This document shows, piece by piece, positions 23,708-37,890 of a DNA stretch of 64,000 nt. Numbering within the stretch: the stretch's first letter is position 1; every line of letters begins with the position of its first letter. The DNA comes from Octopus bimaculoides (Eukaryota). The stretch lies in assembly GCF_001194135.2 (NCBI RefSeq), contig NC_068983.1, positions 146,573,834 through 146,637,833 of the forward strand, in the 5' to 3' direction. The position numbers and the translations under genes were made by a program. Under the pieces are notes generated by a model that saw only the letters and a list, made by a program, of their open reading frames with translations, made no database searches and was not told the DNA's origin.

Positions 23708-26700
23708 GCAGTTACGTTCGTTTGTTAGTTCGTTTGTTCTTTCGTTCGTTCGTTCAATCTTTCATACGTACGTACGTACGTACGTAAGCTCGTTCGTTCG
23801 TTCGTTCGTTCGCATGTACGTACGTACATTCATTCGTTAGATTGTTCGTTCGTTCGTTCTTTCGTTCTTAGGTACGAATGTACGTACGTACGTTCATTCG
23901 TTCGTACGTACGTACGTACTTATGTACTTACGTACGTACGTACCTACGTTTGTTCGTTCGTTTGTTCATTCGTTCTTTCGTTCGCTTGTTCGTTCGATCT
24001 TTCAATCATTCGTTCGTTCTTTCGTACGTACCTACGGACTTCCGTTTATTCGCTCGTTCGTTCTTTCGGTCGTTCGTTCGTTCATTTGTTCGTTCGTTCT
24101 TTCGTTTGTTCGTTCGTTCGTTTGTTCGTTTGTTCTTTCGTTCGTTCGTTTGTTTCGTTCGTTCGTACGTAAGTACGTACGTTCGTTCGTACGTTAGTAC
24201 GGACGTACGTTCGTTCGTTCGTTCGGTCATGCGTACGTACGAAATACTTACGTACGTGTGTTCGTTCGTTCGTCCATTCGTTCGTACGTAGATACGCTCA
24301 TTCGTTCGTTCGTTCGTTTGTTCATTCGTTCGTTCGTACGTACGTACATCCTTTTGTTCGCACGTACGTACCTACGATCAGATGCACGTTCGTTCGTTCT
24401 TACGTACATACGTTCCGCTTTTGGTTGGTTCGTTCGTTCTTACGTTCTTTCGTTCGTAATTTCGTTCATTCGTTCGTTCGATCGTTCGTTTTTACGTACG
24501 TTCGTTCGTTTTTACGTACGTTCGTTTTTACGTACGTTCGTTCGTTCGTTCGTTTGTTCGTTCTTTCCTTCGTACGTACGTATTTTCATTCGTTCGATCG
24601 GAGTAAGTACGTAAGTACGTTCATTCGTTTGTTCGTTCATTCGTTCGTTTGTTCGATCGTTCGTTCGTTCGTTTGTACGTACGTACGTTCGTTCTTTCGT
24701 TCGTACGTACGTACTTACGTTTGTTCGTACTTTCATTCGTTCGTTCGTTAGTACGTTCGTTCGTTCGTTCATTGGTTCATTGGTTCATTCTTTCGTTCGT
24801 TCATTCGTACGTACGTACGTTCATTCGTATGTACGTACGTTCATTCGTTCGTTCGTTTGTTCATTCGTACGTATGTACATTCGTTCGTTTGTTCTTTCGT
24901 TCGTTTGTTCTTTCATTTCGTTCGTTCGGTCCTTCGTACTTACGTACGTACCTTCTGTCTTTCGTTCTTATGTACGTACCTTCGTTAGTTCGTTCGTTTG
25001 TTCGCTCATTCGTTCTTTCGTCCGTCCGTCAATCCGTACGTACGTTCGTTCATTCGTTCGTTCGTTCGTAAGTACGTACTTACGTATGGACGTACGTTTG
25101 CTCGTTCGTTCCTTCAATCGTTCGTTCATTCTTACGTACGAACGTTCGTTCTTTTGTACGTTCGTTCGTTCGCTCTTTCGTTCGTTATTTTGTTATTTCG
25201 TTCGTTCGTTCGTACGTACGTACTTGCGTACTTTCTTTCGTTCGTTTGTTTGTTCGTTCGTACGTACGTAAGTTCGTTCCTGCATCCGGGCGTACGTAGG
25301 TACAAACGTTCATTCGTTTGTTCGTTCATTCGTTTGTTCGCTCGTAAGTTTGTTCGTACATTCATTCGTTCGTTCGTTCGATCGTTCTTTCGTTCGGATG
25401 TACGTACGTCCGTTCTATATTTCGTGCCTACCTACATACGTACACACGTACGTACGTTTCCTCGTTCGTTCTTTCGTTCTTTTCTTCGTTCGATCGTTCG
25501 TTCTTACGTGCGTACGTACGTACGTTTGACCTTTCGTTCGTTCGTTCGTTCGTTCGTTCGTTCGTTCGTTCGTTCGTTCGTTCGTTCGTTCGTTATTTCG
25601 TTCGTTCGTTCTTTCGTCGGTACTTACGTACGTACGTTAGTTCGTTCGTTCGTTCGTTCGCTCGTTCTTTCAATCATTCGTTCGTTCGTTCGTTTGTTCA
25701 TTCGTTCGTTCGTTTGTGCGTTCATTCTTTCGTTCGTTCATTCGTACATATGTACGTACGTACATACGTATGTTCATTCGTTCGTTCTTCCGTTCGTTCG
25801 TTCGTTCATTTCATTAACTCAGTCCTTCGTACTTACGTACGTACCTTCGTTCTTTCGTTCTTATGTACGCACCTTCATTAGTTCGTTTGTTCGTTTGTTC
25901 GTTTGTTCGTTTGTTCGTTCGTTCTTTCAATCGTTCGTTCATTCTTACGTACGAACGTTCGTTCTTTTGTACGTTCGTTCGTTCGCTCTTTCGTTCGTTA
26001 TTTTGTTATTTCGTTCGTTCGTTCGTACGTACGTACTTGCGTACTTTCTTTCGTTCGTTTGTTTGTTCGTTCGTACGTACGTAAGTTCGTTCCTGCATCC
26101 GGGCGTACGTAGGTACAAACGTTCATTCGTTTGTTCGTTCATTCGTTTGTTCGCTCGNNNNNNNNNNNNNNNNNNNNNNNNNNNNNNNNNNNNNNNNNNN
26201 NNNNNNNNNNNNNNNNNNNNNNNNNNNNNNNNNNNNNNNNNNNNNNNNNNNNNNNNNNNNNNNNNNNNNNNNNNNNNNNNNNNNNNNNNNNNNNNNNNNN
26301 NNNNNNNNNNNNNNNNNNNNNNNNNNNNNNNNNNNNNNNNNNNNNNNNNNNNNNNNNNNNNNNNNNNNNNNNNNNNNNNNNNNNNNNNNNNNNNNNNNNN
26401 NNNNNNNNNNNNNNNNNNNNNNNNNNNNNNNNNNNNNNNNNNNNNNNNNNNNNNNNNNNNNNNNNNNNNNNNNNNNNNNNNNNNNNNNNNNNNNNNNNNN
26501 NNNNNNNNNNNNNNNNNNNNNNNNNNNNNNNNNNNNNNNNNNNNNNNNNNNNNNNNNNNNNNNNNNNNNNNNNNNNNNNNNNNNNNNNNNNNNNNNNNNN
26601 NNNNNNNNNNNNNNNNNNNNNNNNNNNNNNNNNNNNNNNNNNNNNNNNNNNNNNNNNNNNNNNNNNNNNNNNNNNNNNNNNNNNNNNNNNNNNNNNNNNN

Positions 26701-37100: not shown

Positions 37101-37890
37101 AAAGTACGAAAGTTCGTACGTACGTACGTACAAACGAACGAACGAACGTACGTACCTAAGTACGTCCGTATAAAAGAACGAACGAACGAATGAACATACG
37201 TACGTACGAACGAACGAACGAACGAACGATCGAAAAAAGAATTAACGAAGGAACGAACGAATGAACGAACGAACGAACGAGCGATCGATCGAACGAAAGA
37301 ACGAAATTTCGTACGTACGTACGTGCGAACGAACGAATGAACGAACGAAACCAATGAACGAACGAACGTACGTACGTACGTACGACCGAAAGAACGAAAG
37401 AACTAACAAACGAACGAACGAACGTACGTATGTACGTATGTATGTACGTAAGTACGCAAGTACGAACGAATGAACGAAAGTCCGTACCTTCGTACGTCCG
37501 AACTTACGAACGAACGAACGAATGAACGAACGAAACCAATGAACGCACGACAGAAAGAACGAAAGAACTAACAAACGAACCAACGAACGTACGGACGTAT
37601 GTATGTACGTAAGTACGCAAGTACGAACGAACGAACGAAAGTCCGTACCTTCGTACGTCCGAACTTACGAACGAATGAACGAACAAAAGATTGAACGTAC
37701 GTACGTACGTACGTCCAAACGTACGACCGAACGCACGAAGGAACGAACGAACCAAGGAACGAACGAAAGATCGGATGAAGGAACGAACGTACAAACGAAC
37801 GAACTAATGGACGTACGCACGTGCGAACGAACTTTCGAACTAACGAACGAAAGAACGAAAGAACGAACGAGCGAACGAACGTACGTACGT
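34200..37890 (-). repeat. Same compound satellite in inverted orientation: (CGAA)n and (CGTA)n
   Basis: Strand bias flips at ~34200 with no gap; reverse complement of 34500-34630 aligns to 31330-31450. Confidence 0.97.

What the first reader, a model, noticed from the sequence alone, without database searches (positions are those of the whole stretch)
23708..37890. 14-kb CpG-dense compound satellite with hidden ~1.3-kb higher-order repeat
Seen: the array is not random tetramer slippage. Rare landmark words recur in conserved order: GGACTTTCG...GTTTCACTCG at 31335 and 32666 (offset 1331; variant at 29658); GAAGAAACGATCAAACGTAAATAC at 35010 and 36357 (offset 1347); a CATACGTTC...TACTATT(G/A)TTCG block at ~28200, ~31040 and ~32345. 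Inference: a kilobase-scale monomer built from two tetramers has been amplified and has diverged, resembling higher-order centromeric or heterochromatic satellites. It may be an undescribed satellite family.
Basis: partly seen in the sequence, partly recalled or inferred. Interest (0 to 1): 0.75.

Follow-up and report, generated by a model that had tools for sequence, protein, structure and literature searches.

The report
Degenerate two-tetramer repeat array in octopus
This is a real, 14-kb CpG-rich stretch of decayed CGTT and CGTA four-base repeats in a transposon-rich part of an octopus genome; a few 0.3-0.4 kb blocks inside it have been copied locally, but it is not a regular 1.3-kb higher-order satellite.

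Summary
The array is real. It holds 12,801 read bases plus three N gaps. TRF finds period 4 throughout, and CpG observed/expected is 3.3 against about 0.5 in the flanks. The units are CGTT and CGTA plus one-step variants.

The off-diagonal signal is far above Markov-simulated arrays: 11 direct self-matches of at least 150 bits against 0-1, and 188 rare 20-mer pairs at offset 1300-1399 against a simulated mean of 17-31.

It is not a higher-order repeat. The ~1.3-kb offset comes from two unrelated block pairs, A (31009-31403 / 32312-32734) and B (34752-35152 / 36111-36503). Each covers about 30% of the supposed monomer. The remainders are no more alike than random pairs, and there is no third copy and no signal at twice the offset. 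Other duplications have offsets of about 0.17-0.19, 0.3-0.4, 0.8-0.9 and 1.0 kb.

Both borders cut old transposon copies.

Best reading: a degenerate compound microsatellite reshaped by slippage, local direct and inverted duplication, and CpG-biased mutation. Whether other loci carry it could not be tested. A 99% duplicate next to a gap may be an assembly artefact.

The parts
23708..34183 (+). Left arm of the array: degenerate (CGTT)n/(CGTA)n read on the + strand. It is interrupted by N gaps at 26158-26810, 28599-29227 and 30478-30577.
   Evidence: TRF period 4, 70-73% matches. AT skew about -0.6. Motif density. Unit spectrum.
34184..37890 (-). Right arm: the same repeat in the opposite polarity, (AACG)n/(TACG)n on the + strand. 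It is gap-free.
   Evidence: AT skew +0.41 to +0.48. Motif density flips. TRF consensus AACG. Sequence read.
34158..34206 (.). Polarity switch. It is a short near-perfect palindrome, ...TACGTATGTACGTTCGTTC-ACTC-GAACGTACGTACATACGTA..., centred at about 34182.
   Evidence: DNA fold of 34120-34250 gives -41.2 kcal/mol, z = -7.5. Beyond the central arms of about 21 bp the mirror similarity is not above the null.
31009..31403 (+). Block A, copy 1.
   Evidence: HSPs to 32312-32460 (91.9%) and 32495-32734 (82.2%). nhmmer 414 bits against a null maximum of 237.
32312..32734 (+). Block A, copy 2, at offset 1303-1351 from copy 1.
32978..33263 (+). Block B, the left-arm copy. It is inverted relative to the two right-arm copies.
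   Evidence: Inverted HSPs to 36416-36197 (87.3%, 206 bits) and 35092-34798 (84.1%, 200 bits). nhmmer 313 bits against a null maximum of 238.
34752..35152 (-). Block B, right-arm copy 1.
   Evidence: 405-bp HSP at 88.4% to 36111-36503, offset 1359. nhmmer 425 bits.
36111..36503 (-). Block B, right-arm copy 2. It holds the 24-mer at 36357.
33733..34132 (+). Block C, left-arm copy.
   Evidence: Inverted HSP 33733-34046 to 35626-35290 (86.4%, 309 bits). nhmmer 430 bits against a null maximum of 248.
35164..35626 (-). Block C, right-arm copy. With B copy 2 it forms an inverted duplication of about 1.2 kb of left-arm 32978-34132. The mirror axis is at about 34630-34710, not at the polarity switch.
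32144..32486 (+). It overlaps the start of A copy 2. Other copies are at 24529-24822 (85%), 28004-28336 (86.5%) and 31009-31157 (92%), at irregular spacing that crosses gaps.
   Evidence: HSPs of 317, 244 and 200 bits. Words verified.
25095..25344 (+). Left copy of a 250-bp duplicate, 99.2% identical to 25908-26157. The right copy ends exactly at the N gap at 26158. This is either a very recent duplication or a gap-edge assembly artefact.
   Evidence: Top self-HSP, 480 bits, offset 813. It is preceded by an older copy at about 80% with offset about 893-897.
37290..37683 (-). Local tandem of a 161-190-bp unit, about 2.3 copies, near the right end of the array.
   Evidence: HSP at offset 173, 86.7%. 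Unit mapping.
32900..33006 (+). Perfect 39-bp x 2.7 tandem inside the array, so a very recent local duplication.
   Evidence: TRF 100% matches, score 214.
22811..23707 (+). Left border: an ORF of an octopus-specific repeated family, cut off by the array. The relatives run 39 residues further.
   Evidence: 88% and 83% identity to two Octopus bimaculoides proteins, the only hits found. Alignment. The missing tail is not found elsewhere in the window.
37891..38352 (+). Right border: the 5' LTR of a degraded Ty3/gypsy-type retrotransposon. Its first 23 bp or so are missing, replaced by the array. The 3' LTR is at about 43855-44238 and pol at 41052-43212.
   Evidence: Direct repeats 37891-37969 / 43878-43956 (92%) and two further pairs. 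A polypurine tract then TG lie upstream of 43878. Pfam RT_RNaseH and integrase hits. Best identities are to O. bimaculoides 84% and O. sinensis 79%.

Best explanation
The region is a long, old, degenerate compound microsatellite. It lies in a transposon-rich intergenic stretch of an octopus genome, either Octopus bimaculoides or a close relative. In canonical motif names it is AACG plus ACGT.

Shown:
- Runs of CGTT alternate with runs of CGTA, which differs by one base.
- The runs are heavily interrupted. The longest pure runs are 15 and 6 units, and only about 36% of bases lie in pure tracts of two or more units.
- Changes at the two CpG positions outnumber changes at the T positions about fourfold.
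- A patchwork of local copies of blocks of roughly 80-460 bp lies on top of this, direct and inverted, at 80-92% identity.
- There is one polarity flip.

Inferred:
- The array grew by replication slippage of CGTT.
- A T-to-A change produced CGTA. Its tandem form is self-complementary and expanded in turn.
- Unequal exchange or template switching copied blocks over 0.17-1.36 kb and further.
- A hairpin or fold-back event at a self-complementary CGTA tract inverted part of the array.
- CpG-biased mutation keeps eroding it.

The two block pairs at about 1.3 kb are two such local events, not a repeating monomer. No coding or RNA function is indicated. Its likely effect, if any, is as a dense block of CpG and of hairpin-prone DNA.
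For: - Period-4 structure over the whole region.
- Unit spectrum of 871 units flanked by canonical ones: CGTT 34%, CGTA 19%, then CTTT, CATT and TGTT. CpG-position changes number 186 against 43 at T positions.
- Self-similarity above the simulated background is limited to a handful of blocks with offsets 173, 196, 311-403, 813-897, about 1013-1053, 1303-1359 and irregular longer ones.
- Block families A, B and C have 2, 3 and 2 copies, with nothing else above the null, and they are mutually unrelated.
- The remainders of the 1.3-kb periods are not similar, and there is no harmonic at 2.6-2.8 kb.
- Polarity flip and hairpin. Inverted duplication 32978-34132 against 36503-35164.
- Both borders truncate older transposon copies.
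- The window otherwise holds only transposon fragments.
- Octopus origin.
- In O. bimaculoides fewer than 10% of CpGs are methylated, and repeats other than satellites are barely methylated (PMC9476566). That fits the survival of such a CpG-rich array.
Against: - Two independent block pairs sharing nearly the same offset (1303-1351 and 1359) is a mild coincidence. It could be a trace of an older period of about 1.35 kb.
- Pure tetramer tracts carry little information, so old homology in them would be invisible.
- Three gaps hide about 1.4 kb, and the assembly looks like a gapped draft, so block order in 23.7-30.5 kb is uncertain.
- Unit-variant counts are not independent events, because slippage copies variants.
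- The G-to-T variant CTTT is as common as the CpG transitions, which deamination does not explain.
Confidence: 0.75

Rival explanations
1. This is a true higher-order satellite, in which a monomer of about 1.33-1.36 kb built from the two tetramers was amplified and has since diverged. Only the more complex 400-bp parts remain recognisable.
For: - The 1300-1399 offset is enriched 6-11 fold over simulated arrays.
- Two different places show nearly the same offset.
- The right-arm order B-C-B, with the left arm's B-C cut at the polarity switch, is compatible with an older B-C period of 1.36 kb.
Against: - There are only two copies of A and two same-strand copies of B.
- No third copy is found at 33640 or 37470, where sequence is available.
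- There is no harmonic at twice the offset.
- About 70% of each supposed period is no more alike than random pairs.
- A and C would occupy the same phase but are unrelated.
- The 24-31 kb part shows spacings of 0.8-1.0 kb instead.
Confidence: 0.08
2. The kilobase-scale order is partly an assembly artefact. The tetramer array is real, but some duplicates, the gaps and possibly the polarity flip come from misjoined or gap-filled short-read contigs, or from two haplotypes placed in series.
For: - The strongest duplicate (250 bp, 99.2%) ends exactly at the N gap at 26158, while all other duplicates are 80-92% identical.
- A 77-bp copy at 97% and a 92-bp copy at 92% straddle the 100-N gap at 30478-30577.
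- The window has 17 N runs.
- A 98% internal duplicate, 39142-39441 / 40708-41007, sits among gaps in the neighbouring retrotransposon.
Against: - The A, B and C pairs and the polarity switch all lie inside one gap-free contig, 30578-39473.
- The copies differ by 8-18%, so they are distinct sequences, not one sequence assembled twice.
- Pure CGTA runs at the switch are at most 16 bp, too short to confuse typical assembly word sizes (inference).
Confidence: 0.12
3. It is a foldback-type transposable element. Its two long inverted arms (10.5 and 3.7 kb) are built of short tandem repeats, as in Drosophila FB elements.
For: - Two arms of opposite polarity made of tandem repeats, with no central unique loop.
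- Sharp borders against unrelated sequence on both sides.
Against: - No specific similarity between the two termini. Inverted matches near the terminal anti-diagonal stay within null scores.
- There is no target-site duplication.
- The two flanks are two different truncated transposons, not one interrupted sequence.
- There is no transposase ORF.
- No second copy is known.
Confidence: 0.04

Closest known systems
Bkm-type compound tetranucleotide satellite, (GATA)n(GACA)m, of snakes and other animals (PMC3215666, PMC5793158; original descriptions recalled from my own knowledge)
   Same: Kilobase-scale arrays built from runs of two tetramers that differ by one base, interspersed and degenerate, in repeat-rich DNA.
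   Different: - The motifs are different, CGTT/CGTA, and both contain CpG.
- No evidence here for sex-chromosome or multi-locus accumulation.
- Only one locus has been seen.
- It includes a polarity flip.
Ordinary degenerate or compound microsatellite (a 'simple repeat' in repeat annotation)
   Same: Period 4 throughout, growth by slippage, interruption by point mutation, no coding capacity.
   Different: - It is unusually long (12.8 kb read).
- Its motifs contain CpG.
- It carries internal block duplications well above a Markov background.
Higher-order-repeat centromeric satellites (alpha-satellite type)
   Same: Some blocks are more similar to a copy about 1.3 kb away (82-92%) than to the array background (about 70-73%).
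   Different: - No regular period and no multi-copy head-to-tail units.
- Similarity covers only about 30% of the supposed unit.
- The base unit is 4 bp rather than a monomer of about 100-200 bp.
- Copies are far less alike than typical higher-order units.
Foldback (FB) elements and large palindromic or inverted duplications formed by hairpin-primed or template-switch repair
   Same: Two arms of tandem repeats in opposite orientation, with a short palindrome at the junction and a 1.2-kb inverted duplication nearby.
   Different: - No matching termini, no target duplication and no transposase.
- The mirror axis of the inverted duplication (about 34.65 kb) does not coincide with the polarity switch (34.18 kb).

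Membership tests
Higher-order-repeat satellite | Three or more head-to-tail copies of the higher-order unit at a constant period, which would give harmonics in a dot-plot | tested here: not met
   A has 2 copies and B has 2 same-strand copies. No third copy exists where sequence is available. Rare 20-mer pairs at 2600-2799 are at background level.
Higher-order-repeat satellite | Similarity between neighbouring units extends over the whole period | tested here: not met
   About 400 of 1330-1360 bp are similar. The remainders score 349 against a null median of 369, and 357 against 339 (rank 20 of 150).
Higher-order-repeat satellite | Copies of the higher-order unit are much more alike than the basic repeats within it | tested here: inconclusive
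   Block copies are 82-92% identical against 70-73% period-4 matching. This holds only for the short blocks.
Higher-order-repeat satellite | Centromeric or heterochromatic location (CENP-A, H3K9me3, FISH) | not testable with these tools
   No chromosome-level context or chromatin data was available.
Compound or degenerate microsatellite (Bkm-like architecture) | Short-period tandem repetition across the whole region | tested here: met
   TRF gives four period-4 rows covering 23715-26157, 26833-28580, 29248-34179 and 34222-37889, with 70-73% matches.
Compound or degenerate microsatellite (Bkm-like architecture) | Two related motifs in alternating runs, with the remaining units being one-step variants | tested here: met
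   CGTT 34%, CGTA 19%, then single-substitution variants. There are 292 CGTT runs and 149 CGTA runs of two or more units.
Satellite DNA family | The same repeat present as long arrays at several loci, or in high copy number in the genome | not testable with these tools
   No octopus genome collection could be scanned. Outside the array the window holds only a CGTA/GTAT microsatellite of about 110 bp at 7675-7800. One 20.8-kb O. sinensis locus had none.
Foldback transposon | The termini are specific inverted copies of each other, flanked by a target-site duplication | tested here: not met
   No inverted HSP above the null joins the two ends. The flanks are two different truncated transposons with no shared duplication.

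The most novel reading that the evidence does not exclude
This locus is one member of an octopus-lineage, CpG-dense CGTT/CGTA satellite family. On this reading the family once had a higher-order period of about 1.35 kb (order B-C-B) and marks a specific chromatin domain, for example the relatively more methylated 'satellite' class reported for O. bimaculoides, or a pericentromeric region. Hairpin-prone CGTA tracts would drive its inversions.
Probability: 0.07. Interest if true: 0.5.

Novelty: new member of a known kind. Interest (0 to 1): 0.25.

Why it matters
Mostly as a caution. Exact landmark words recurring at a kilobase offset inside a simple-repeat array can come from two isolated block duplications and need not mean a higher-order satellite.

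In its own right it is a modest curiosity: a 13-kb array built from CpG-containing tetramers. From my own knowledge, such motifs are usually rare. CpG o/e is 3.3 in a genome whose flanks are CpG-depleted. The array also shows a polarity flip at a self-complementary tract.

If such arrays proved numerous in octopus genomes, they would be natural probes for cytogenetics. They would also be a test case for how a sparsely methylated genome treats CpG-dense repeats.

Tried and rejected
- I translated the longest array ORF (501 aa, VRSF/VRTY-type) and searched the 5.8-billion-protein set. It returned only weak, generic low-complexity hits to other tetranucleotide-repeat translations in unrelated organisms and no octopus entries. 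This says nothing about copy number.
- Exact-protein look-ups to find the source scaffold or paralogous loci all returned nothing.
- One O. sinensis locus, fetched through a retrotransposon relative (L001), holds no such array and is not syntenic.
- Literature searches found no description of a CGTT/CGTA array in cephalopods. I tried octopus with satellite DNA, with AACG or ACGT microsatellites, with cephalopod centromere and tandem repeats, and with simple repeats.
- I tested for an extended palindrome around the polarity switch. Only the central 21 bp or so stand out; the wider alignment scores 32, against a null median of 26 and a 95th percentile of 40. The inverted-repeat finder gave only background complementarity of 70-77% in every register.
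- I tested whether gap flanks overlap, which would make the gaps spurious. They do not.
- I considered that the array is a microsatellite tail of one of the flanking transposons and rejected it. The left ORF is truncated relative to its relatives, and the LTR lacks its first 23 bp or so.
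Full report
**What is there**

Window 23708-37890 is a continuous array of tetranucleotide repeats, with 12,801 read bases and 1,382 N in three gaps. Tandem Repeats Finder reports period 4 over essentially the whole span, at 70-73% matches.

Taking units flanked by canonical units, 34% are CGTT and 19% are CGTA. The rest are mostly single-substitution variants such as CTTT, CATT, TGTT, CTTA, TGTA and CATA. The array is badly interrupted. The longest pure runs are (CGTT)15 and (CGTA)6, and pure tracts of two or more units cover only 4.6 of the 12.8 kb.

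CpG density is extreme: 1978 CpG, observed/expected 3.31. The flanks are CpG-depleted at 0.56 and 0.46. Substitutions at the two CpG positions of the unit (186) outnumber those at the two T positions (43, leaving out the T-to-A change that defines CGTA). This fits CpG-biased mutation. The counts are not independent events, and the common G-to-T variant is unexplained.

The array changes polarity at about 34183. To the left the + strand reads CGTT/CGTA (AT skew about -0.6). To the right it reads AACG/TACG (AT skew +0.41 to +0.48).

The junction is a short near-perfect palindrome. The 131 nt around it fold as DNA at -41 kcal/mol, z = -7.5. Beyond the central 21 bp or so, the mirror similarity is not above the array background.

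**Gaps first**

N runs lie at 26158-26810, 28599-29227 and 30478-30577. The next N run is at 39474. So 30578-39473 is one gap-free contig.

The array continues on the same strand across each gap, and the gap flanks do not overlap. Offsets that cross gaps are unknown, which affects the copies near 28200 and 29658.

Two things near gaps look suspicious:
- The strongest self-match in the whole array, 25095-25344 = 25908-26157 (250 bp, 99.2%), ends exactly at the first gap. Every other duplicate is 80-92% identical.
- Copies at 97% and 92% identity straddle the third gap.

**Checking the observation**

The recurrence is not chance.
- Self-blastn gives 11 direct and 3 inverted matches of at least 150 bits. 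Thirty-two Markov-simulated arrays (orders 4, 6, 8, 10, arms simulated separately) give 0-1 of each.
- 20-mers that occur two or three times give 188 pairs at offset 1300-1399, against simulated means of 17-31 and a maximum of 61.

**Is it a 1.3-kb higher-order repeat? No.**

- A sliding 200-bp comparison shows similarity at a 1.3-1.4-kb offset only at 30908-31500 and 34708-35200, plus one low-complexity window whose partner lies across a gap.
- These are two block pairs: A (31009-31403 / 32312-32734, 82-92%) and B (34752-35152 / 36111-36503, 88%).
- A and B are not related to each other, nor to a third block C.
- Profile HMMs built from A, B and C, calibrated on 20 simulated arrays (null maxima 237-248 bits), recover only their own members. 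That gives A x2; B x3, the third being inverted at 32978-33263; and C x2, at 33733-34132 and inverted at 35164-35626.
- The remaining 900 bp or so of each supposed period is no more alike than random segment pairs. Left scores 349 against a null median of 369. Right scores 357 against 339, rank 20 of 150.
- Nothing stands out at twice the offset.
- There is no third copy at about 33640 or about 37470, although sequence is present there.
- Elsewhere the array shows other local duplications:
  - a 161-190-bp unit x 2.3 at 37290-37683;
  - a 196-bp offset pair at 36866-37343;
  - offsets of 311-403 bp around the third gap, 813-897 bp at 24.6-26.2 kb, and about 1.0 kb at 28.4-30.6 kb across gaps;
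  - a perfect 39-bp x 2.7 tandem at 32900-33006.

**Inverted duplication**

Left-arm 32978-34132 (B then C) is mirrored by right-arm 36503-35164, at 84-87% identity. The mirror axis is at about 34.63-34.71 kb, roughly 0.5 kb from the polarity switch. At least two rearrangements are therefore needed.

The right-arm order B-C-B is compatible with an older local duplication of about 1.36 kb. This is the only hint in favour of an ancestral period.

**Borders and context**

- On the left, the array cuts off an ORF (22811-23707). Its only relatives in 5.8 billion proteins are two Octopus bimaculoides proteins (88% and 83%), and both run 39 residues further. The missing tail is nowhere in the window.
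- On the right, the array abuts the 5' LTR of a degraded Ty3/gypsy-type element, which lacks its first 23 bp or so. The 3' LTR starts after a polypurine tract at about 43855, and the LTR copies are 81-92% identical.
- The element's pol is closest to O. bimaculoides (84%) and O. sinensis (79%) proteins.
- The rest of the window holds LINE, LTR and mariner fragments, and no host gene that I could see.
- The organism is therefore an octopus, and the locus is transposon-rich intergenic DNA.
- In O. bimaculoides fewer than 10% of CpGs are methylated. Transposons are barely methylated, and satellites somewhat more (PMC9476566). That makes the persistence of a CpG-rich array plausible.

**Most likely mechanism**

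Shown:
- tetramer runs of two related motifs;
- CpG-biased decay;
- a few local block copies, direct and inverted;
- a polarity flip at a small palindrome.

Inferred:
- slippage expansion of CGTT;
- origin of CGTA by one base change, followed by its own expansion;
- unequal exchange or template switching for the block copies;
- a hairpin or fold-back event at the self-complementary CGTA tract for the inversion.

No function is indicated. I put this reading at 0.75.

Rivals:
- a true but decayed higher-order satellite (0.08);
- a kilobase order that is partly an assembly artefact (0.12);
- a foldback-type transposon (0.04), which fails on matching termini and target duplication.

**Comparison with known things**

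The architecture is that of compound tetranucleotide satellites such as Bkm, (GATA)n(GACA)m (PMC3215666, PMC5793158). It has different, CpG-containing motifs.

It fails the tested defining features of a higher-order-repeat satellite. Membership of a genome-wide satellite family could not be tested, because no octopus genome could be scanned.

I found no description of a CGTT/CGTA array in cephalopods in the searchable literature. I file it as a new member of a known kind, of low to moderate interest.

Noticed in passing
window 7675-7800: A small CGTA/GTAT-type microsatellite, (GTAC)n mixed with (GTAT)n, starts directly after the 100-N gap at 7575-7674. Apart from two isolated 8-mer matches, at 19323 and 49617, it is the only other stretch of these tetramers in the window.
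   Followed up: partly
window 37891-44238: A degraded Ty3/gypsy-type LTR retrotransposon. Its LTRs are only 81-92% alike, and gag and pol are broken into several ORFs.
   Followed up: partly
window 39142-39441 and 40708-41007: A 98% internal duplicate inside the retrotransposon, lying among short N gaps. It looks like either a recent duplication or an assembly duplication.
   Followed up: no
window 22811-23707: An ORF of an apparently octopus-specific repeated family. The N-terminal half is Thr/Asn-rich and low in complexity. The C-terminal 150 residues or so are conserved. There is no Pfam domain. Only two relatives were found, both from O. bimaculoides. What kind of element it belongs to is unknown.
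   Followed up: partly
window 45251-46123: A mariner (Mos1-type) transposase remnant, split into at least two frames, with an HTH_48 domain hit.
   Followed up: partly
window 18169-18585 (-) and 51220-51603 (+): Two fragments of a LINE endonuclease (Exo_endo_phos type) with similar peptide sequence, in opposite orientation. Reverse-transcriptase-like fragments also appear at about 12200-12565 (-) and 57797-58138 (+).
   Followed up: no
window 55279-55710: A long leucine-run reading frame on the minus strand, which suggests a trinucleotide microsatellite. The surrounding 55-58 kb has a marked AT skew of +0.2 to +0.27.
   Followed up: no
window, 17 N runs (for example 3467-4112, 5070-5488, 62059-62969): The window is a heavily gapped draft scaffold, with several gaps of exactly 10 or 100 N. 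Order and spacing anywhere near gaps should be treated with care.
   Followed up: partly
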